A stretch of DNA of 63,834 bases, filler included, from Ministeria vibrans ATCC 50519 (taxonomy: Eukaryota > Protista > Filasterea), in the NCBI GenBank assembly GCA_943704425.1. It is 6 parts of 6 records of this genome, joined end to end, with 100 filler letters (N's around TTAATTAATTAA, not from the genome) between each part and the next. Parts side by side here need not be neighbours in the genome. Positions count along the whole stretch, not along the records: positions 1 to 11,417 come from CALSCP010000324.1; 5 more parts are not named here. The stretch is one strand, 5' to 3'. Numbering within the stretch: the stretch's first letter is position 1; each line of letters opens with the position of its first letter. Below are positions 1-11,321 of the stretch, one piece after another. Under the pieces are notes generated by a model. It saw only the letters and a list, made by a program, of their open reading frames with translations. It was not told where the DNA came from and ran no database searches. The position numbers were made by a program, and so were the translations under genes.

Positions 1-3000
1 ACGTGCCAGGACACCGTTAACGGCTATACGTGCGTGTGTGCGTGTGGCTATGAGGGCGTGCATTGTGCGACGGACACCAATGAGTGTGCGAGCAATCCAT
101 GCACGAACGGCGGCACGTGTGTCAATGAGGTGTGCTCGTTCTGGTGCTCGTGTCCCGTTGGGTTCACCGGTCTGTACTGTCAAACGAACATCAACGAGTG
201 CGCGTCAAACCCGTGCGCCAACGGCGGAACCTGTGTTGATCAGGTCAACGGCTACACCTGTACGTGCGACTGCGGCTGGGCCGGCACACACTGCACGACC
301 AACATCAACGAATGTGCCTCGACACCGTGTCAAAATGGCGCGACGTGCGTCGACAAGACGTGTGGTTTCACGTGTACATGTCCGCCGGGCTACCACGGCG
401 CCCTCTGCGAGACAAATACAAACGAGTGCTTCTCCAACCCATGTGCCAATGGCGGTACATGCGTTGACACGGTCAGTGGGTACACTTGTACGTGTCGCTG
501 TGGGTACGAAGGGACGCACTGTGAGATGGAGACGAACGAGTGTGCGTCGAACCCGTGTTCGAATGGCGGCACGTGCTTTGACGAGGTGTGCTCGTTCTGG
601 TGCTCGTGCAGTCCTGGGTTCACTGGCGTACATTGTCAGACACAGATCGACGAGTGTGCATCGAATCCGTGTGCCAATGGTGCGACGTGTGTCGATGGAG
701 TCAACGGGTTCTCGTGTGATTGCGCGTGTGGCTGGCAGGGTGCACTGTGCACTGTGAACATCAACGAGTGTGCGTCGACGCCGTGTCAGCATGGCGGCAC
801 GTGCACAGACGGCACATGTGGATTCACGTGTGCGTGTGCGCCGGGCTACTATGGACCGTTTTGTCAAACGGATGTGGACGAGTGCGGGAGCAGTCCGTGC
901 CAGAACGGTGCGACGTGCCAGGACACCGTTAACGGCTATACGTGCGTGTGTGCGTGTGGCTATGAGGGCGTGCATTGTGCCGCCAACACAAACGAATGCG
1001 CATCGGACCCGTGTCAGAATGGCGGTACGTGCGCTGATGGCGAGTGTGGCTACACGTGTGCGTGCAAGTACGGGTTTACTGGCGCTATGTGCGAGACCAA
1101 CATTGACGAGTGTGCGTCGAATCCGTGTGCAAACGGTGCATCGTGCGCCGACGTCGTCAATGGATACACGTGCTCGTGCGCATGCGGCTGGGCCGGCACA
1201 CACTGCACCACCAACATCAACGAATGTGCCTCGATGCCGTGTGAACATGGCGGTGCCTGCGTCGACAAGACGTGTGGCTACACGTGCCAGTGCCCGACGG
1301 GATACCATGGTGCGAATTGCGAGACGGATACAAACGAGTGCGCCAGCAACCCCTGTCTCAATGGAGCAACTTGTATGGACATTGTTGGTGGGTTTACATG
1401 CTTCTGCTCTTGTGGTTATGAAGGTGCGCACTGTGGCATGAATGTCAACGAGTGTGCGAGCGACCCATGTAACAATGGCGGCACGTGTACGGATGACTCA
1501 TGTGGGTACACGTGTACTTGCCAGTTAGGTTTCACTGGCGTTAGTTGCGAGACTGATATTGATGAGTGTGCTTCAAGCCCGTGTGCTAATGGAGCCACTT
1601 GTTTGGATGGAGTCGACAGCTACACGTGTAATTGTGGATGTGGATGGGAAGCAACTCACTGCTCAATCAATGTCGATGAGTGCTCTTCAAGTCCCTGTCA
1701 GAATCACGGCGTGTGTGTGGACGGCACGTGTGGATTTGTCTGCGTGTGTAAGCCTGGATATTATGGTCTGTTGTGCCAAGCAGACGTTGACGAGTGCGCC
1801 TCGTCGCCCTGCGAGAACGGCGGTAGCTGTCTTGATACTGTTGGTGGATACACCTGCAATTGTCGATGTGGCTATACGGGCACGCACTGCGAGAGCGACA
1901 TTGACGAGTGTGCCTCGTCACCCTGTCTTAATGAGGCCTCGTGTTTCAACGAGATCTGTGGCATCTGGTGCATGTGTACACCCGGTTATACCGGCTTCCA
2001 CTGCGAAACTAACGTCGACGAGTGCGCCTCAAACCCCTGTGCGAATGGTGCGACCTGCACTGACGGCATCAATGGACACACATGCGAGTGTGCCTGCGGA
2101 TGGGCTGGTCCGCAATGCACACACAACCTGGACGAGTGTGCTTCGAGCCCCTGCCAGAATGGCGCGACTTGTGTTGACGAAACGTGCGGCTATAAATGCG
2201 CCTGCTCTCCTGGCTACCACGGCGACCACTGCGAGACCGACATTAACGAGTGTGAAAGCAGTCCTTGCCAACATGGTGCTTCGTGTGTCGAGGCTGCCAA
2301 TGGCTACTCCTGTGTGTGTGGTTCGGGTCTGACGGGTACCTTGTGTGAATCCAAAATTGACGAATGTGCCTCGTCGCCGTGTCAACACTACGGTACTTGC
2401 GTCGACTACCTTGACCATTACGTGTGCCAGTGCGTGCCCGGCTACACCGGTTCCGAATGTGAGAGCAACATTGACGAGTGTGCCTCGTCGCCGTGTGCTT
2501 CGGGTGGTACCTGTGTGGACAAAATTGATCGCTACGAGTGTCTATGCCGTGATGGACACGCGGGGACCCGCTGTGAGACAGACGTCGACGAGTGTGCTTC
2601 GTCGCCATGTGTTAATGGAGGAACCTGTTTTAACTTGCTGGGTTCGTTCACGTGCCACTGCGTTGACGGTCTCACGGGTGTTCTGTGTGAGTCGGCAATC
2701 GACGAGTGCGCGTCTAGTCCCTGCGAGCATGGTGGCACCTGTGTCGACAAGGCGTCAGCTCACACGTGTATTTGTGCGGACGGTTACCAGGGAGCTCAGT
2801 GTGAGACGGACGTGGACGAGTGCGCCTCGTCGCCATGTGGCGATGGTGGTACGTGTACTGATGGCGTTGCAAGTTTTGTGTGCACCTGTGCGGTTGGTCG
2901 TGTTGGCGACCACTGTGAGACGGACGTGGACGAGTGTGCCTCATCACCGTGTCACAATGGCGCCACCTGCTTGAATTTGTCCGGTGTGTATGAGTGCACC

Positions 3001-5595
3001 TGCGTCGAGGGCTTTGTAGGTAATCAGTGTGAGACGGATGTCGACGAGTGCGCATCCAACCCTTGCCTCAATGGTGCGTCGTGTCTCGATCAGGCTGGAC
3101 GCCCCCATTGCGAGTGTCTGAGCGGCTTCACAGGCGACGAGTGCGAGAGCAAGATTGACCCATGCGCATCGTCGCCCTGTCTGCAAACAGGCACGTGTGT
3201 TATCACGTCGTACGAGCCCGCGGATTATGCTTGTTCTTGTGATAACGGATTTACTGGCGCTTACTGCGAGTCGGAGATTGCGGAGTGTCTCTCGTCGCCG
3301 TGCGTCAACGGCGGTAACTGCAGCGAGGGCACTGCGCCCGGCGCGTTCGTGTGCGCATGTCCGCCCGAGTACACGGGCGTCTCTTGCGAGACACTCTACG
3401 AGTGTGCCTCGGCACCATGTCACAACAACAGCTCGTGTGTCGACGGCGATAATGCCTACTCGTGTGTGTGTCTCCCGGGATTCACCGGCTACGATTGCGA
3501 ATCTGAGGTCGATGAGTGCGTGTCGAGTCCATGCAAGGTCGGTGCAACATGCCGCGACATGCTCAACGGGTACATTTGCACGTGCTTCTCAGGCTGGGTG
3601 GGCACGCACTGCGACGAGGTCGATCCATGTCTGTCGTCGCCCTGTGCAAACGGTACCGAGTACTGCCATGGCTCGAGTGCCGCAAGCTACTCATGTACTC
3701 CTGTGTGCGACCCGTCACCGTGTCTCAATGGCGCCACTTGTGTTGCCGGCGACGGTTTTGACGTATGCATGTGTCCCACAGGCTTTACAGGAGACGCGTG
3801 CGAGACTGCCGTTGATGCGTGCGACAGCAGTCCGTGCGAGAATGGCGGAACATGTGTGCAGGGGACAACGCATGTGCTCTACAACTGCACCTGTGTGGTC
3901 GGCTACAACGGTACTCACTGCGATGTACTTGTGGACGGTGGCAGTAGTAGCGAGAGTTCGTTTACCAACGTGGGAGGAGCACCGGGCTGGCTTATTATTG
4001 TGCTGATTTTGTCGCTAGTGGCGTTGCTTGCCTTTATTGCCATGTTTGCGTACATGCGCAAGCGCAAGGACCCCAGCGCCGTCGAAGTCAATGTGCTGAC
4101 GGCTCATCCGGTGGGACAGCCCAAGGAGTGGCGTACGGGAGCGCTCTACCAGCCCGATGGTGTGTTCGCGTCGTCAGTTGGCTCGCGCAGCACATCGTCG
4201 CACGCCGGCTCGAGTGACACAGAACACGACGATCACTACTCGTCGAGTCTGGGTGGCATGGCTCGTCGCTCGTCGGTGGCTCCATCGCCGGCAACGGGTC
4301 TCATGAGTGGACATGGTGGTGGTGCGGGCCAGACACCACTGGCGGCAACACCTGCAGGAGTGGGCTCTCGACAGACGAGCTTCTTGACGGGACTGCGCGG
4401 TGACGGACCGAGCAATGCGAAAGCCAACAGTGGTTTGCGGGCTCCGGCCGGGCGTCGACCAAGTATGGCACCTCTACTGAGTGGCGAGGGTGAAGTGGTC
4501 ACGACGGCGAGCGGCGAGTCGTCGCGTCGTGGCTCGAACGCACACATGGGCGCAATGGCTGCGGCAATGGCAGGACTCTCGGAGGGCCTTCCCGACTGGA
4601 TTGGTGAGGGTGGCGAGACTATGAACGGCAGCAGTCGAAATGCGAATATGTTTGCAGATGAGTCTGAGCTGGCCATTGCGGAGATGCAGATGATCTCGGG
4701 TCGCGGTGGCAGCTGGATGGATGCGAGTCGCGTGGCGGAGACGGACGCAGGACACCATATGGGCAGCACGGGCGCCATTGGCAGTTGGGTGTCTACAAGT
4801 CAGTCGACGATGCGCCGACGAGGCAGTCGGTCGAGCAGCCGCGAAGGAGGTGCGTCATCGTCGACGACGACGCACGAGCGTCCTTGGCTCAACGACAGCA
4901 GCTGGGTGCCCAACCAGAGTAGTGGGGCCGACACTACGCGCTACGACACCGATTTGGCTTACGTCACCTCGACGTCCCGTCCTTCGTCGGCGCAGGGCGG
5001 CAGCACCCTGCGCCGTCGCAATCGCACACCAGTGACAGCGTCCGCCGAGGCGAGCAGCAGCCAAGCGAGGGCGTCAATGGATTTGATGCTTGCGCTTGCA
5101 GGTGCTTCGGGCGGAGCGGGTGACGGTCGTGCGGGTCATGCGGGAATGGGTCGCCAGCGATCGTTTCAGCCGTCCCTCGACGCCGTAGCCCGTTCCAGCA
5201 ACAGTGCTGCGGCGACAGCGACCAAAACGGAGCGCAACACGTCGTACACAGAGCGTCCCCTTGAGCGCGAGGTGCATGTCCTTGACGATGGTACCGAGGA
5301 GATTGTGGAGACGAGCGAGGAGATCGCCACGACCACCACGACCACAACAACGGAACTTGTGCAGTCGTCGAGTGCCGCTGTGGCCAGAGCACGCGTGGGT
5401 TCGCCGTTGTCGTCGTCGGGCCACAGCACGCTGCGTCGTCGCGCCTCGGCGACACTTGCTGCGCGCGCCATCACGCCTCTCGACGACGATGATGTCTACC
5501 AAGACCAGTTTCCTCTGCCTAACCGTGGATCGCAGCTTCCCAATGCAATTGGGGACGAGTCTGAGGACGACGATATGAACGAGACATACATTTGA
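1..5595 (+). CDS. Single-pass membrane protein with at least 35 tandem EGF repeats (mostly calcium-binding, Notch/fibropellin-type), a TM helix, a long disordered cytoplasmic tail and a C-terminal PDZ-binding motif; 5' truncated by the window edge
   Basis: Frame is open from base 1. Repeating 38-aa units (D/N-x-D/N-E-C-A-S-x-P-C-x-N-G-G/A-T-C). Hydrophobic [23 protein letters not shown] followed by RKRK at about 3988-4068. Ends ETYI*. No LNR/NOD/ankyrin repeats, so not Notch itself. Confidence 0.93.
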
Positions 5596-6075
5596 GAGAG
5601 TCATGATCACGAGAGGAGAGTGTTTTCGTGAGAGAGAGAGATATATTGTACGCGAGAGAAACAATGAAATAAAAATATTATTACTATTATAATATTGTTT
5701 GAATGTTGCACTGAGACTTCTGTTGAAAGAATTCGGAAAGGATTTGAGATAATTATTATTAAATATAAGAATATTTAAAAGAGACTCGAGAGACGTTGTA
5801 CTCAATAAAATTGTGACTTTATTAAACGTAGACACAACAAGACAATATTAATATACAAAACAAAGAACATGCAGCACAATACGTCATAATATATTATTCT
5901 TAATTTCTTATGGTTTCACAGTTTTGTCTTGATTTGAGCGATCTAATCTATTTATTTTCTCTTATTCGTATCATTATTAACCAACGATTGCAAGGACTGG
6001 TCACTGAAGGAGTGAAGGACGTGGTGCCACATACATATTGTTGCTGTTGCTCATCTCGCGCGCGGTGAATGACCA

Positions 6076-9000
6076 ATGACCTCTTTGCGAGACACGCTCA
6101 GAGAAAAACGGGCGTCGTCGCGCGCCTCATTGCTTGCGTCGCCAAGACAACGTGAAACCCTTCCTCAAGGGGTGGGTGCCGCCGATGCAGCCGCAAGGCT
6201 AGCCCATCGCCAGTGGTCCCGACAGGGATTAATGCCAACGAGCGGGGCCCAGAGCCTCACAATGTTGGAGTTGCAAGGTTCGCCAGAGTGAGACATTGAC
6301 AGAGAGAGAGAAGCCGTTTGTATTTTTTTGAAAACGTAAAAGCACATTCGGCACACACGCATTTGCCTTTGTATTCTTGAGTTTGATTGATAGCCATTTG
6401 TTCACCTGCAGACGTTGTCAAACTGGAGCGCAATGCGCTCACTTTCTCACGTCAAAAAAGTTGACACTGATTGTATTTTTTTTTTTTGAATTCGTTGCAG
6501 ACGTAACAAACAACAGATCCTCTATGCGCGCTCGTATTGCCGAGGCTGCTCGTTCTGACCGACAGGCTGCTGCAACGGAGGAAACTTCAAGTGGGAGGCC
6601 GTTGGGCCACCATGTTCAGACGCCGGCGTGCTCAGACGCGTCAGCCGTTGCCGAGCGACCACCAATCGACTCGACAATGCTTTCTGACGAACTCGAGACA
6701 GGTGCTCCACCACTGCGTGTGCCAAGCACGTCCAATTCCTGTTTAAAGACCTCCAGTGATACTGGCGACACCGACAGCGATGTGTCGGTCGCGATTGAGC
6801 CTGACGAGGGTGCACCACCACCAACGTTAGCGTTTGTCCAGACGGCTGCTGTGGACACGACGCCCGCCTCCAATGACGAAGCATTTTCTTTCTTTACGAC
6901 GGGTGTTGCTGTGACCACCGACCATGACGATCGTGAGGAGGGCGAGCGAGCGACGCAGGCAGAGCCCGAGTTGGAAGCGTTGACTGAGTATGCGGGTGCA
7001 CACCATGCCGATGGCCTGAATGCAACCATCAATGGGATTGTCGAGGGACACTTGGGTGCGGACTGGAAGTCGCAGTTTGCAATGGAGGGCAAGTGGAGAT
7101 ATGTACCGTGGCGCGAGCGACGTGAAGCGGAAACACAACGCCATGTGTATGTGAGCAGTCTGGAGGCACACTCGGCGGAGGAGCGTGTTGTGGATGGAGA
7201 CCACCAGCCTCGCTTTATTGAGGACGAAGGCTTCTTTGTGGGTCGCGGACCAGCGATGAAAGTTGCCTGGTGGAATCGCAATCGAGCGGAAAACCGCATT
7301 CTTGTGAGTGCGGATGAGCGTCGAGCCGACTGGTTTGGACCGGACGGCCACCTGGCTGGCAGTCAGGCCAATCCACTGCGCGCCCTGCCCCATCGACTGG
7401 CGCGCATGCATGACTCAGACTACGACGATGACAACGACGGTCGACGCGTAGACGAGTTGGAGGCGCAGGCGCCTGGAGCGCTACGGGTGGTGGTGCATCG
7501 ACCTGTACGGAGTGTCGTGTTGGATGAGAGAGGACTCAACGTAGATCAAACAGTGTCGCTCGATGCGACTGCTGGCGGAGAAGGCGACTACCGGCTGTGC
7601 GTGGACCTTTCCGAGGTGCGTTTTCTGCAGCATCCACTCCAAACACGCGAGCATGCACTCGCTAACGAGATCACCGTGCTAGCGAAACGACTGCGCGAGT
7701 GGTCCCAGCGCAACCGACTCGCATTCTTGAACGATCGACTGCGTGCGCTACGTGATGCCGTTCAGCGTCTGGCCAGCGACGACCCCGCAGCGTCGTTGCG
7801 CCAGTCAACGGCATTGCGTCTCGGCAGCAACTCGGTGGTGCGGAGCCATTCGACTGCGTCGGTGCGTAGACGAACGCTCGCACAAAAGTACCGACTGGAG
7901 ATTCGTCAGGTGCGCACCCAACGGGACGCCGAGCAACGCGTGCCTGAGCAGCTTACCGAGGAGATGATGCGCGTGTGGCGTCAGTTGAAGCAGCTACGGG
8001 TGCAGCAGGGCTTCTGCTCGACAAGTGTGCGAGTGCAGGTGCGGGAAGAGACGCACGATATGGCACAGGACCGTGAGAGGCTGGAAAGGATTGTCCGTGA
8101 CGAGGTGGAAGATGAGCGTGCCGAGTACGATGCGTGGTTTGCAGAGCAGTTGGACGCGTGGGAGTTGGAGCAACACGGCGACGCACCAATGCATGCATTT
8201 GACGAAGGGGCCGTTCTCAGTCGCGTAGTCACTCGCATTGCGCGTGTGTACCGTGAACCAGGGCGAAGTGTGTACCACCCCGATGTCACGCCGTCAGTGG
8301 TGATGACACCCGATGCAGAGTGTCCGCGTGTGGAACGAGACCGGCGCGAGGCACTGCACCAGACCGCCGTGTACGCTGTATTCCGCTTCAATGGACGCGA
8401 TGTCGATCGCACGAGTCCACGTCCGCTCGCTCGTGACTTCCATGTGTACTTTGGCGACATTGTCGAATTAAATGTGCGACGTGCTCCCGACTCCCTGTCC
8501 CTCCAACTGTGGCAGGTGGGTGGTGTGCGCAATACCATGCTGTGCGAAGTGCCACTTGGCGTACCTCCACCGGGCGTTACACTCGCTACCACAGGCGCTT
8601 CTCATGAGACATATCCATTCTCCACTGAGAGCGCTGTAGCCGTCCTAGGCGTCGATAACAACTCTTTTACTAATGCTCGCAACGACGGTGTCACTAGCGA
8701 CGTCGATGCAAATGGTGGAGCTCCCACGATGCTGCCGAGCTCGGTGTTTGATGGGCAGCTGGGTCGCACACAGGGGGTGGTGACAGGAGCGCGACGAGAG
8801 AGCGTGGCGTCGCTGTCTCGACGTCGGTCGCTCCCGCGAGTCCCTGCAGGAGCGGGCACGTCGTCGTTGACGACGCCGCTGGTGTCATCGCTATCAGGCG
8901 AGCTCTATGCACGCACAGGTTGGGGTGTGTCCGAGCAGACAGGACATGTACTATCTCCACCAAAAAGTACCGGCAGCAACAGTACTAGCAAGGGTATCAG

Positions 9001-11196
9001 CTTGAGCGGGGGTACTGAGGCAGATGCCAGCGACGTACTGACGCACACTGGGATGATGAGTGCACGACGGGTTGCGGAGTGGATTGAACAACGTCATTTG
9101 GATCCCAACGACCCACGCAACGCAGCACTGCTGACGTTTGCCCGACTGCATGGCAATGCGGGAGTAGAGATGTCTGCGCCGACGGGCTACTTTCGTCTGC
9201 AAGTGCCCTTGAATGGACTGGCACTAGTACTGGACGACGGAATGGAGACGGCAACAGTGGTGGAGCAGCGGCGTGAGCGATTATTGCAACTGCGAGATGG
9301 AGGACACACGCACTATCGTCAGATTGAAATGGTTCCGCTCGATGGCGCTCAGATCGACGAGGGAATCTTTGCGGTGGCGGACGAGGAGGCACGTCAAGAA
9401 CGCCTGCGCAAGCAGAGCCTTGATCCATTTGAGGGATACGTGGATGGCGCAGTCGATAGCGATCTTCGAGGTCTGAATGAGACAACGGGGCCTCACGTGA
9501 CTTTGTCGCTGGAGCAAGAGCGACCGCGTTTTCTCGACCGACTGCGCGCGACTGCACTGGTGCGACAGCGTCGGGGTCAACAGGTGCGCACTGTGCTGGA
9601 GGACGTTGTCTCGGAAGAGCCGCTGCCGACGATGCAGGTACTCTGGTCGACGGTGCGCCAGGTGTTTGCACGCCGCCATCCACTGGCGCCGACACGCCGA
9701 GAGCGACGCATGGTCGAAGTGGCTGGTCCGGTGCAAGAGGATATTTCTATAATTGTGCGCATTGTACGTGTGCACAACGCTCCCGTGCGGCTGGAGGCGC
9801 GCGAGCGAGCCCAACGCGAGCAGCAAGAAAAGCGAGAGGCAGAACAGGCACTGGAACTGCAACGTCAGCTTGACCAAAGAGAAGCTGGTACGGCACCGTC
9901 GTCGAGTGGGGCCATTCTCGAACGGACTGCGGCCACGCGAGCATCGCGCAAACGGGATCGTCGCGAGAGCATCGCTATGCTTGCAGCTTCCGGCTCCGTC
10001 TCAGACCTGCTGGCGAGAGCCAACATTGCAGTGCGACCACAGTTGAGCGCCACGGGCGCCCAGGCGGCTGCTATGCAGCGACAGCAGAGTCAGCAAGTAG
10101 TGGGCATTGACTCGGTAAATGCAGAGGAGGAGCTGGGTCTGGAGGCGAGTCGGGCGGACGCCAGTGAGCTTGGTAGTGCCTACCGTGCGGCCACGGCGCT
10201 TGTGTCGCGTGAGATTCTCGGACATGTTGGACACCGTGACGTGCGGCCGTTTGTCGAAGTACGCTTTCAACGGGCGGACCAGCGCACGCGCACTTCAGCG
10301 GGTCGCAATGCACAGTTCAACGAGGAGATGACTCTGCCCTTTCGCAGCCCCACCGGCGAATACACTCCGACTGCGTTGCAATCGGTGGACGATTCGATTT
10401 TCATCAATCTCTTTGACGAGGTTGTTGTCGATGCGCTTGTGGACGAGCGCGATCGTGAGGCGCAGATCCAGCAGCGACTCGAACGTCGCTGGCTCGGCAC
10501 TCTCACGCTTCCTTTCTCGACACTCTACCTGAACAACCGCATTGAAGGAACCTTCCGGCTCGAGACTCCGCCCGTGCTGCTGGGCTATGCGCAAGAAGGA
10601 AGTGGCAGCGCGGTGATGATGAGTGGTGGCAAGGCGGCGGCCGGCCAAGCAGGTGGGGATGTCGATTGTGACTCTGGGCGATGCGACACGCATGTGACGC
10701 TGTTTCTGACGATTGAGCCTCCCTTGAGACCACTCGCGCCGCTGCACCCAAACCTGGAGAGCAGCGAAGACCCGCGTTTACTGTCGTACGCGGAACACTG
10801 GTCAAGCACACTGCGACGGCCCTTTGACACACTGGTGATGGACATCAACGGCAAGGCGGTTTTTATGACACGCTTCCTCACGGCTCAGCAGCCGCCAGTG
10901 GAGCTGTTGATGGACGACGGCCGTGACAATGGTGTGGGCTCGAGTTCTAATAGAAGTGGCACTGCAGTCGGCGCTCCACGTCTGTCGCTCATGGACACGC
11001 TGACACGACTGCTCTGCTTTGTGCGTGCCATTCCATTTGTCGGGGATGCCGTAGCGTTTAGTGGCAAGTGCGACTTATGGAGCACGAGCGAGGAGTTCCT
11101 TCAGATTTTGGCGGGTGACGAAGAAGAGCACGCCATTCTGCTGTGCAACTTTTTCCTTGCGCTTGGCCTCGATGCCTATCTTGTCTTAGGCACAGG
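6076..11196 (+). CDS. CC2D2A: Ciliary transition-zone protein CC2D2A/MKS6; 3' truncated at the contig end
   Basis: Motifs PRFIEDEGFFVG, FLQHPLQTREH, LDPNDPRNA; C2 domain VRPFVEVRFQ...FNEEMTLPF; DLWSTSEEFLQILAGDEEEHAILLCNFFL. Probable first exon 6076-6277 spliced to about 6501; donor GTGAGT at 11197. Confidence 0.9.
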
Positions 11197-11321
11197 TGAG
11201 TGATATGTGAAAGAAATCAAAGAATTGTGCACCACTGTTGCAGTGTACCTAAGAATTATTCATCGTGATCAACATCGAGTTTATGTATAATAGGTTATTA
11301 TTATGAATAATAATAATAATA

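What the first reader, a model, noticed from the sequence alone, without database searches (positions are those of the whole stretch)
1..2250. Strictly alternating 7-cysteine EGF repeats predicting disulfide-stapled EGF pairs
Seen: the first 20 EGF repeats each carry one extra Cys and alternate perfectly. Type A has it two residues after C5 (C5-x-C-G-[YW], e.g. CTCDCGWAG). The next repeat, type B, has it in the C3-C4 hairpin turn ([DN]-x-x-C-[GS]-[FYI]-x-C4, e.g. CVDKTCGF). There are ten A-B pairs with no exception; the more membrane-proximal repeats lack the extra Cys. Known: in calcium-binding EGF tandems (Notch, fibrillin) the post-C5 loop of domain n packs on the C3-C4 hairpin of domain n+1, and unpaired cysteines in EGF arrays are usually harmful (CADASIL-type NOTCH3 mutations). 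Inference: the two extra cysteines form an inter-domain disulfide, making a covalently rigid 76-aa two-EGF module. This would be a new rod-building unit for a cell-surface adhesion or mechanosensing receptor in a unicellular relative of animals. I do not recognise this architecture from any described family.
Basis: partly seen in the sequence, partly recalled or inferred. Interest (0 to 1): 0.88.

Follow-up and report, generated by a model that had tools for sequence, protein, structure and literature searches.

The report
Disulfide-stapled EGF domain pairs
A cell-surface protein of a single-celled relative of animals has a long stalk of EGF domains in which each neighbouring pair carries two extra cysteines, placed where the two domains touch; they most likely form a covalent bridge between domains, which I found described nowhere.

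Summary
Frame +1 of nt 1-2238 encodes 20 calcium-binding-type EGF repeats of 38 aa with 7 cysteines each. They alternate strictly between type A (extra Cys at C5+2) and type B (extra Cys at C3+5). Twelve normal EGFs, a transmembrane helix and a long tail follow.

The inter-domain disulfide A(n)-B(n+1) was not measured, because the tools gave no model coordinates. Five independent lines support it:
- In 889 EGFs sampled from this genome, A is followed by B 37 times out of 37. A is never followed by a normal domain, and B never follows one. Isolated A-B pairs sit among normal EGFs. Another gene has 44 consecutive pairs.
- The A-B units are old (third codon positions 41% identical), yet every extra Cys is kept, with both TGT and TGC codons.
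- The two sites map onto the published cbEGF interface.
- In about 3,260 ordinary EGF tandems, these two positions are the strongest co-varying inter-domain pair of 1,444.
- Rare A-B pairs recur in other organisms, including a ctenophore (p = 3e-9).

The AlphaFold2 model (pLDDT 95.5) superposes on Notch EGF11-13. Upstream, the gene carries a VWA domain inserted into an EGF hairpin. Literature searches found no description. Verdict: a new variant of a known kind.

The parts
1..72 (+). C-terminal two-thirds of a type A EGF, cut by the piece edge and a scaffold gap. Extra Cys codon at nt 43-45.
73..2238 (+). 19 complete 38-aa cbEGF repeats with 7 Cys each, in the order B,A,B,A ... A,B. With the partial first A this makes ten A-B pairs of 76 aa. 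A extra-Cys codons start at nt 271, 499, 727, 955, 1183, 1411, 1639, 1867 and 2095. B extra-Cys codons start at nt 133, 361, 589, 817, 1045, 1273, 1501, 1729, 1957 and 2185.
   Evidence: (Pfam EGF 1e-105, EGF_CA 2e-40)
2239..3615 (+). 12 canonical 6-Cys EGF repeats (37-41 aa), most with the calcium-binding consensus.
3616..3987 (+). Irregular membrane-proximal Cys-rich EGF-like region followed by a short Ser-rich linker.
3988..4056 (+). Transmembrane helix (aa 1330-1352), followed by the basic stop-transfer residues RKRK.
   Evidence: a TM in the same position aligns with the upstream paralogue
4057..5595 (+). Cytoplasmic tail of about 510 aa. It is Ser/Ala/Thr/Gly-rich and has no Pfam domain. 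It shares a short motif R-Q-x-S-F-Q-P-[SG]-L-D-A with the paralogue (aa 1718, nt 5152) and ends in -E-T-Y-I. The stop codon is at nt 5593-5595.
6377..11203 (+). Neighbouring gene, not part of the feature: a CC2D2A-like ciliary transition-zone protein. Used here only to place the organism.

Best explanation
The window holds the 3' part of a gene for a type-I membrane protein. Its layout is: signal peptide, an EGF domain with a MIDAS-type VWA domain inserted in its hairpin, then at least 35 (probably about 48) seven-cysteine cbEGF domains, 12-14 ordinary EGFs, a TM helix and a long disordered tail.

In the seven-cysteine part, each type A domain keeps its three normal disulfides and adds a Cys at C5+2. 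That is two residues before the aromatic that packs on the next domain. The following type B domain adds a Cys at C3+5, in the beta-turn that receives that aromatic. The two thiols form a seventh, inter-domain disulfide, which locks the A-B interface covalently. B-A interfaces remain ordinary calcium-dependent cbEGF junctions. The result is a rod of rigid 76-aa two-domain links that holds the VWA head far from the membrane.

Shown: the sequence pattern, the order rule, purifying selection, the canonical rod-like predicted fold, contact of the two positions inferred from covariation, and probable transcription. Inferred: the disulfide itself, the gain in rigidity or stability, and the adhesive role.
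For: 1. Order rule. An HMM segmentation of 889 EGFs from 22 loci of this genome gives 38 A, 38 B and 813 normal domains. Transitions are A->B 37, A->normal 0, normal->B 0, A->A 0, B->B 0, normal->A 10 and B->normal 10. On contig C1379, isolated A-B pairs are each flanked by normal EGFs. The finding's own array starts with A after a normal EGF and ends with B. Contig C159 has 45 A and 44 B in strict alternation, starting with A.
2. Selection. A-B units are 55-78% identical at DNA level and 41% at third positions, yet all 14 Cys are kept. Both TGT and TGC occur at the extra-Cys codons in every gene.
3. Geometry. PMC4826273 places the packing aromatic at C5+4 of domain n against the major beta-turn of domain n+1. 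Alignment to human Notch1 EGF12-13 puts the A Cys at the C5+2 site and the B Cys at the C3+5 turn site. The AF2 model of A-B-A-B has pLDDT 95.5 and superposes on Notch EGF11-13 at 1.3-2.0 A rmsd.
4. Covariation. In ordinary tandems with A and B excluded, site 29 of domain n and site 21 of domain n+1 rank 1 of 1,444 inter-domain pairs in 2,599 pairs from other organisms, and rank 2 in 661 pairs from this genome. In the n->n+2 control they rank 1113 and 380. The residue preferences show charge and size complementarity.
5. Recurrence. Among 5,395 EGFs of 255 proteins from other organisms, A and B are each under 0.4% of domains, yet 4 of 9 A are followed directly by B (Fisher p = 3e-9). One case belongs to a ctenophore (Bolinopsis) protein cluster. 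In P0066 both Cys are present, while its homologue P0097 lacks an A-B pair.
6. Junction tuning. At the A-B junction, Trp occupies C5+4 in 57% of A domains against 8% of normal ones. The residue after C6 of A is T/A/S instead of E, and B starts N-I-N.
Against: No coordinates were returned, so the SG-SG distance was never measured, and no chemical evidence for the bond exists. About 1% of normal EGFs here (8 of 813) carry a lone seventh Cys elsewhere, so odd cysteines are tolerated in this organism. A few type A-like domains in other organisms have no B partner (P0004, P0088, P0123). Covariation can reflect subfamily structure rather than contact, although the n->n+2 control argues against this. 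The arrays arose by duplication, so the many copies are not independent events. The independent ones are the roughly 20 array boundaries and the 4-5 cases in other organisms.
Confidence: 0.8

Rival explanations
1. The extra cysteines make intermolecular disulfides, as in the teneurin-type dimer, a zipper between parallel stalks, or cross-links into a cell coat. They would not link neighbouring domains of one chain.
For: Teneurin EGF2 and EGF5, which have an odd number of cysteines, mediate covalent dimerisation (PMC2185078). The window's EGFs also hit the Pfam Teneurin EGF model. Nothing here excludes higher-order assembly.
Against: Intermolecular bonding would not require A to be followed immediately by B (37 of 37 here; p = 3e-9 elsewhere). 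It also would not require isolated pairs always to be A then B. Both sites lie in the buried inter-domain interface and co-vary as a contact pair in ordinary tandems. Teneurin's odd EGFs are not adjacent.
Confidence: 0.08
2. The two cysteines stay reduced or reversibly oxidised. They would be a redox-sensitive or metal-binding thiol pair at the interface, or a labile 'allosteric' disulfide that switches the stalk between stiff and flexible.
For: They would be close in space. Lone seventh cysteines are tolerated in about 1% of this genome's EGFs.
Against: These are extracellular, oxidatively folded domains in which every other Cys is disulfide-bonded. Hundreds of thiol pairs per protein would be very reactive. 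There is no His or Asp pattern suggesting a metal site.
Confidence: 0.07
3. The pattern has no function. A chance Cys pair in one two-EGF unit was simply copied by tandem duplication.
For: The arrays are products of unit duplication, with a 4-EGF super-period. The family is hugely amplified in this genome.
Against: Third codon positions are near saturation (41% identity), yet all extra Cys are kept, with synonymous codon changes. Pairs persist in at least four genes on four contigs, including isolated pairs. The same two sites were hit in unrelated organisms.
Confidence: 0.03
4. The extra Cys re-wires disulfides within each domain, giving an alternative intradomain connectivity and leaving a different Cys free.
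For: None specific. In principle, seven Cys allow isomers.
Against: All six canonical Cys, their spacing and the cbEGF consensus are intact. AF2 predicts canonical EGF folds at pLDDT 95. An odd count per domain would still leave one thiol unpaired.
Confidence: 0.02

Closest known systems
Tandem calcium-binding EGF domains of Notch (EGF11-13) and fibrillin-1
   Same: The 38-aa repeat has six canonical Cys and the D/N-x-D/N-E ... D/N ... Y/F calcium consensus. It also has O-glucose-like (C1-x-S-x-P-C2) and O-fucose-like (C2-x4-T-C3) motifs. The AF2 model superposes on Notch EGF11-13 at 1.3-2.0 A, and the aromatic-on-beta-turn interface is the same.
   Different: Every second interface carries a Cys pair at C5+2 of domain n and C3+5 of domain n+1. 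None of the aligned solved Notch chains has Cys there. The protein has no LNR, ankyrin, TB or hybrid domains. The interface would be held covalently as well as by calcium and packing.
Teneurin (Ten-m/Odz) EGF repeats 2 and 5
   Same: [quoted passage not shown] The Pfam Teneurin-EGF model also hits the window.
   Different: In teneurin the odd repeats are not adjacent and the bond joins two chains to make a dimer. Here the odd repeats are always adjacent in a fixed order, and their sites lie at the cis interface. Teneurins are type II proteins with YD-repeat shells; this is a type I protein with a VWA head.
Eight-cysteine EGF variants (laminin-type LE, integrin beta I-EGF)
   Same: These are EGF-derived rod-building modules with an additional disulfide relative to the six-Cys core (general knowledge, not tested here).
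   Different: Their extra disulfide lies within one module, which has 8 Cys. Here each module has 7 Cys and the extra bond would bridge two modules. The loop lengths here are those of classical cbEGF.
Inserted VWA/I-domain adhesion receptors (integrin alpha I and beta I-like domains)
   Same: A MIDAS-bearing VWA domain (D-x-S-x-S, T, D) is inserted into a loop of another extracellular domain at the far end of a stalk.
   Different: The host domain here is an EGF, split at its C3-C4 turn, and the stalk is an EGF array. There is no sequence relationship to integrins beyond the VWA fold. Ligand binding is untested.

Membership tests
Calcium-binding EGF domain (Pfam EGF PF00008 / EGF_CA PF07645) | Six cysteines in the C1..C6 spacing with C4-x-C5 | tested here: met
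   All 20 repeats keep Cys at model positions 5, 10, 16, 25, 27 and 36. Pfam EGF E = 1e-105 with 19 stretches.
Calcium-binding EGF domain (Pfam EGF PF00008 / EGF_CA PF07645) | Calcium consensus D/N-x-D/N-E/Q before C1, D/N after C3, and Y/F before C4 | tested here: met
   Column profile: positions 1 and 3 are N/D, position 4 is E in 89-94%, position 18 is D in 78-89%, and position 23 is Y/F in about 90% of both A and B. EGF_CA E = 2e-40. Calcium binding itself was not measured.
Calcium-binding EGF domain (Pfam EGF PF00008 / EGF_CA PF07645) | EGF fold and rod-like tandem arrangement | tested here: met
   The AF2 model has pLDDT 95.5. Foldseek matches Notch2 EGF11-13 (5mwb) at rmsd 1.3 A and TM 0.91, and Notch1 EGF11-13 (2vj3) at 1.9 A. 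This is a prediction, not an experiment.
Notch receptor | LNR repeats, heterodimerisation domain, and intracellular RAM/ankyrin repeats | tested here: not met
   Pfam finds only EGF-type models in the ectodomain and nothing in the 564-aa C-terminal part. The upstream part carries VWA, not MNNL/DSL.
Teneurin-type odd-cysteine EGF (intermolecular dimerisation) | Non-adjacent odd-Cys EGFs in an 8-EGF block of a type II protein with a YD shell; the bond joins two chains | tested here: not met
   The odd-Cys EGFs here are always adjacent in A-B order. The protein is type I, with an upstream signal peptide and a C-terminal TM, and has no YD or NHL domains. Chain-to-chain bonding is not testable with these tools.
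Laminin-type EGF / integrin I-EGF (8-Cys modules) | Eight cysteines per module, with the fourth disulfide inside the module | tested here: not met
   There are seven Cys per module (36 of 38 A and 36 of 38 B; the rest are truncated). No Laminin_EGF or I-EGF Pfam hit was found.
Proposed new unit: disulfide-stapled A-B EGF pair | A (Cys at C5+2) is immediately followed by B (Cys at C3+5), and neither occurs alone | tested here: met
   A->B 37 of 37 in the genome sample, plus 44 pairs on C159. A->normal and normal->B are both 0.
Proposed new unit: disulfide-stapled A-B EGF pair | The two extra cysteines are within bonding distance and oxidised to a disulfide | not testable with these tools
Indirect support comes from interface mapping and top-ranked covariation of the two sites.

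The most novel reading that the evidence does not exclude
The A-B pair is a natural inter-domain disulfide staple invented at the one inter-EGF contact that tolerates it. A unicellular holozoan lineage amplified it to hundreds of copies (at least 44 consecutive pairs in one gene). This would build covalently stiffened stalks, by rough estimate over 100 nm long, that present a MIDAS VWA head inserted into an EGF hairpin. That would be an adhesion-receptor design not found in the literature searches here. The same two sites (C5+2 of domain n and C3+5 of domain n+1) would then be a general, transferable position for engineering rigid EGF tandems such as Notch or fibrillin fragments.
Probability: 0.5. 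Interest if true: 0.72.

Novelty: new variant of a known kind. Interest (0 to 1): 0.62.

Why it matters
Tandem cbEGF rods (Notch, fibrillin, many matrix and adhesion proteins) are understood to be stiffened only by calcium and one hydrophobic contact. Odd cysteines in them are best known from disease (CADASIL) or from chain dimerisation (teneurin). A conserved, heavily amplified, naturally stapled EGF pair would be a third solution. It would show where two consecutive EGFs can be bridged covalently, and it offers a simple test system: a 76-aa module. It would also add a distinctive VWA-on-EGF-stalk surface receptor to the adhesion repertoire of animals' unicellular relatives. Finally, the covariation result is general. 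It pinpoints a contact pair in ordinary EGF tandems that could help interpret variants at these positions in human EGF proteins.

Tried and rejected
- Measuring SG-SG in the model: structure prediction returned only pLDDT and DSSP, and no coordinate file appeared in /data.
It gives no verdict.
- Tandem Repeats Finder found nothing, because the repeats are too diverged at DNA level.
Only the separate motif counts are available. The A motif gives 932 against 330 for the control, and the B motif 307 against 56. The A count is inflated by TG-rich simple repeats.
- Naming the organism: the sequencing-run names are coded. The CC2D2A search gave only relatives at 43-48% identity. The last protein search, with an integrin-beta ORF, returned nothing, probably because Cys-rich words swamped the candidate list. 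A photosynthetic alga was considered because the DNA turns up in algal metagenomes. This was rejected: no LHC family hit, and T-box, integrin-beta and cadherin are present.
- B(n)-A(n+1) pairing was rejected because of the array ends, the isolated A-B pairs and the low covariation rank of the reverse site pair (142 and 647).
- Searches of PDB sequences and of 255 top homologues for long A-B arrays elsewhere found only single pairs.
- A regex for VWA-in-EGF insertions in those homologues found none. P0066 and P0097 have VWA, but it is not inserted in an EGF.
- Five literature searches for inter-EGF disulfides or seven-cysteine EGF pairs found nothing relevant.
Full report
WHAT IS THERE. Frame +1 of the window is open from nt 1 to the stop at 5593-5595. 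Segmentation gives one truncated and 19 complete 38-aa EGF repeats in aa 1-746. Each complete repeat has seven cysteines. They are followed by 12 regular six-Cys EGFs (nt 2239-3615) and an irregular Cys-rich membrane-proximal piece. Next come a TM helix (aa 1330-1352, nt 3988-4056) and a low-complexity tail of about 510 aa with no Pfam domain. Pfam calls the repeats EGF (1e-105), hEGF and EGF_CA.

The seven-Cys repeats alternate without exception:
- Type A has C4-x-C5-x-C*-G-[YW].
- Type B has C3-x-[DN]-x-x-C*-[GS]-[FYI]-x-C4.

The extra cysteines lie 30 aa apart from A to B and 46 aa apart from B to the next A, in all ten pairs. One addition: there is a four-EGF super-period.

THE REST OF THE GENE. 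The window is G000:C324:9638-21110. Directly upstream lies a 1505-N scaffold gap. Beyond it, in the same frame, are 15 more A/B repeats. These are preceded by one normal EGF, so the array starts with A. Further upstream lie three features:
- an exon with a signal peptide;
- an EGF whose C3-C4 hairpin is interrupted by a VWA domain with a D-x-S-x-S MIDAS motif;
- an intron with GT..AG ends.

Pfam supports VWA in this region. The upstream fragments of the finding's own gene score below Pfam's cut-off. The equivalent region of the C159 gene scores above it.

The protein is therefore: signal peptide, EGF with inserted VWA, at least 35 seven-Cys EGFs, 12-14 normal EGFs, TM, tail. A paralogue immediately upstream (C324:1-4551) has the same plan, and its A-B pairs are interrupted by normal EGFs.

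IS IT REAL AND EXPRESSED? Contigs of independent public runs reproduce the array. One contig covers nt 192-2491 with 4 differences. In runs guessed to be RNA, contigs stop 40-60 nt after the stop codon and give no depth over the intergenic nt 5801-6000, whereas DNA runs continue. This is consistent with transcription, but the RNA label of those runs is only a guess.

THE ORDER RULE. I built an HMM from the window's repeats and segmented 889 EGFs from 22 loci of the same genome. The sample holds 813 normal, 38 A and 38 B domains.

| Transition | Count |
|---|---|
| A -> B | 37 |
| A -> normal | 0 |
| normal -> B | 0 |
| A -> A | 0 |
| B -> B | 0 |
| normal -> A | 10 |
| B -> normal | 10 |
| B -> A | 25 |

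The only A without a B is cut by the N gap. On contig C1379, at least seven isolated A-B pairs each sit between normal EGFs. On contig C159, one open frame has VWA, three normal EGFs and an EGF split by a second VWA. It then has 45 A and 44 B in strict alternation up to the contig end. So the unit is A followed by B, never B followed by A.

Motif counts suggest hundreds of such domains in the genome, and many tiny contigs look like collapsed A-B repeats.

NOT A DUPLICATION ARTEFACT. The nine complete A-B units in the window are 55-78% identical in DNA and 49-79% in protein. Their third codon positions are only 41% identical, and TRF sees no repeat. Yet all 14 Cys per unit are kept, and both TGT and TGC are used at the extra-Cys codons in every gene. 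That is purifying selection on both extra cysteines.

STRUCTURAL PLAUSIBILITY. [quoted passage not shown] An alignment of an A-B pair to human Notch1 EGF12-13 (2vj3) shows two things:
- The A Cys occupies C5+2, the Pro of C-M-P-G-Y, two residues before the packing Tyr.
- The B Cys occupies C3+5, in the turn of the next domain.

None of the aligned solved chains has Cys at either site. AF2 on window nt 187-642 (A-B-A-B), with a 100-row in-register alignment, gave pLDDT 95.5. The model superposes on Notch2 and Notch1 EGF11-13 at 1.3-2.0 A, so both junction types are predicted to be canonical rods.

INDEPENDENT CONTACT EVIDENCE. I took only ordinary adjacent EGF pairs, with A and B excluded. I computed APC-corrected mutual information for all 38 x 38 inter-domain column pairs.

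| Data set | Rank of site 29(n) x site 21(n+1), of 1,444 |
|---|---|
| 2,599 unique pairs from 255 proteins of other organisms, mostly animals | 1 |
| 661 pairs from this genome | 2 |
| Control n -> n+2, other organisms | 1113 |
| Control n -> n+2, this genome | 380 |
| Reverse site pair (21 -> 29'), other organisms | 142 |
| Reverse site pair (21 -> 29'), this genome | 647 |

The other top pairs (30-4', 30-20', 30-18', 31-20', 32-2') all fall in the published interface. Residue preferences at 29/21' show charge complementarity: R or K with D is enriched 1.9-2.4-fold, and D-D is halved. They also show size complementarity: bulky residues pair with Gly, Ala pairs with Asn, and Ala-Gly is depleted. 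The two extra cysteines therefore sit on the pair of positions that behaves most like a direct side-chain contact between consecutive EGFs.

RECURRENCE ELSEWHERE. Two large protein searches returned only generic EGF arrays. There was no self hit and no long A-B array. Among 5,395 EGFs in those 255 proteins, 11 are A-like and 18 B-like. Even so, 4 of the 9 A that have a scored neighbour are followed directly by B (Fisher p = 3e-9).
- One case lies in a cluster containing a Bolinopsis (ctenophore) protein.
- In P0066 both Cys are present, and no A-B pair was detected in its homologue P0097.
- A few A-like domains lack a partner (P0004, P0088, P0123).

The pair has thus arisen or been kept several times. 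Only this genome has amplified it.

WHOSE GENOME? The assembly is 29.7 Mb in 2,860 contigs.
- It has no LHC family hit.
- It has two T-box loci, three integrin-beta genes and many cadherin repeats.
- The neighbouring CC2D2A-like gene is closest to animals and to the filasterean labelled Opistho-2, at 43-48% identity. Reading Opistho-2 as Pigoraptor is from my own knowledge.
- The DNA also turns up in seawater and algal-culture metagenomes.

A marine unicellular holozoan fits best. The species was not identified.

MECHANISM AND RIVALS. The best reading (0.8) is an intramolecular A(C5+2)-B(C3+5) disulfide that makes a covalently locked 76-aa two-EGF link. B-A junctions remain calcium-dependent, since both types keep the calcium consensus. 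The A-B junction is further specialised: Trp at the packing site in 57% of A against 8% of normal domains, no Glu after C6 of A, and N-I-N at the start of B. The rivals are:
- Intermolecular bonding as in teneurin (PMC2185078). This does not explain obligatory adjacency and order.
- A reduced thiol pair. This is unlikely for an oxidatively folded extracellular array.
- A neutral hitch-hiker of duplication. Selection contradicts this.
- Re-wired intradomain bonds. The canonical Cys and the predicted fold are intact.

That the rod serves adhesion is inferred from the distal MIDAS VWA domain. Mechanosensing is speculation.

NOVELTY. Five full-text searches found no description of an inter-EGF disulfide or a paired seven-Cys EGF module. 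The library lacks most subscription journals, so this is absence of evidence only. I rate it a new variant of a known kind (the cbEGF tandem), with moderate to high interest. The decisive measurement, distance in the model or crystal plus disulfide mapping, is simple and still to be done.

Noticed in passing
L030:8829-9731 (G000:C159:62828-63730) and L009:5375-6400 (G000:C324): A complete VWA domain with a D-x-S-x-S MIDAS motif is inserted into the C3-C4 hairpin turn of an EGF domain. The N-half of the EGF runs C1..C3 plus a few residues, then comes about 240 aa of VWA, then the C-half x-C4-x-C5-x-x-G-Y-T-G-x-x-C6. The insertion is present in at least two genes, and C159 has two VWA domains. 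It was not seen in 300 homologues from other organisms by a simple regex.
   Followed up: partly
G000:C159:61811-73822 (L030+L031), frame 2: An open frame of 4,004 aa runs to the contig end. It holds VWA, 3 normal EGFs and an EGF split by VWA, then 45 A and 44 B EGFs in perfect alternation. This is the longest stapled array seen.
   Followed up: yes
G000:C324:8133-9637 (just upstream of window nt 1); G000:C1692; many contigs under 500 nt (C51, C57, C64, C114 ...): The gene is broken by a 1505-N scaffold gap. C1692 is 100% identical to window nt 713-900. Dozens of tiny contigs carry A or B motifs. The assembly is evidently fragmented by this repeat family, so copy numbers are lower bounds.
   Followed up: partly
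window 1-3615, all EGF repeats: Nearly every repeat carries Notch-type O-glucose (C1-A-S-x-P-C2; Ser 88-94%, Pro 92-94%) and O-fucose (C2-x4-T-C3; Thr 61-84%) consensus sites. The genome has hits to the GT90 (POGLUT-like), O-FucT and Asp/Asn beta-hydroxylase Pfam families. Assignment is at family level only.
   Followed up: partly
ordinary EGF tandems in P0001-P0255 and G000 loci: This is a general result, not specific to this gene. Column C5+2 of EGF n and column C3+5 of EGF n+1 are the strongest co-varying inter-domain pair in ordinary 6-Cys tandems, with charge and size complementarity.
   Followed up: yes
window 5152-5184 and 5581-5592; L009 about 4440-4475: The cytoplasmic tails of the two neighbouring paralogues share little beyond the TM. 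They do share a short motif, R-Q-x-S-F-Q-P-[SG]-L-D-A, and an acidic D-D-D-[VW]-Y stretch. The window protein ends in -E-T-Y-I, which resembles a class I PDZ ligand (inference only).
   Followed up: no
L013, L022, L024, L028 (e.g. G000:C1379): Eight of 813 normal EGFs carry a lone seventh Cys at other positions, such as C3+3 in C-L-D-C-L-G-S-W, with no partner in neighbouring domains. Unpaired cysteines are therefore occasionally tolerated, or these are errors.
   Followed up: no
window 476, 480 (also 972, 978, 1233, 3235, 3693): Public runs, including the probable source run, read A instead of G at nt 476 and 480. The change at 476 turns Ser159 into Asn, which is the usual residue at that EGF position. 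This is likely an assembly error or strain variation. No cysteine is affected.
   Followed up: no
window 6377-11203 (+): This is a CC2D2A-like gene (CC2D2A N-terminal C2 domain, DUF5523, start of the CEP76 peptidase-like domain). Its best relatives are animals and a filasterean at 43-48% identity, which implies that the organism builds a cilium or flagellum.
   Followed up: partly
window 5596-6376: The intergenic region is AT-rich (GC 0.42-0.49, against 0.58-0.64 in coding sequence). RNA-like runs give no depth over nt 5801-6000, whereas DNA runs do.
   Followed up: no
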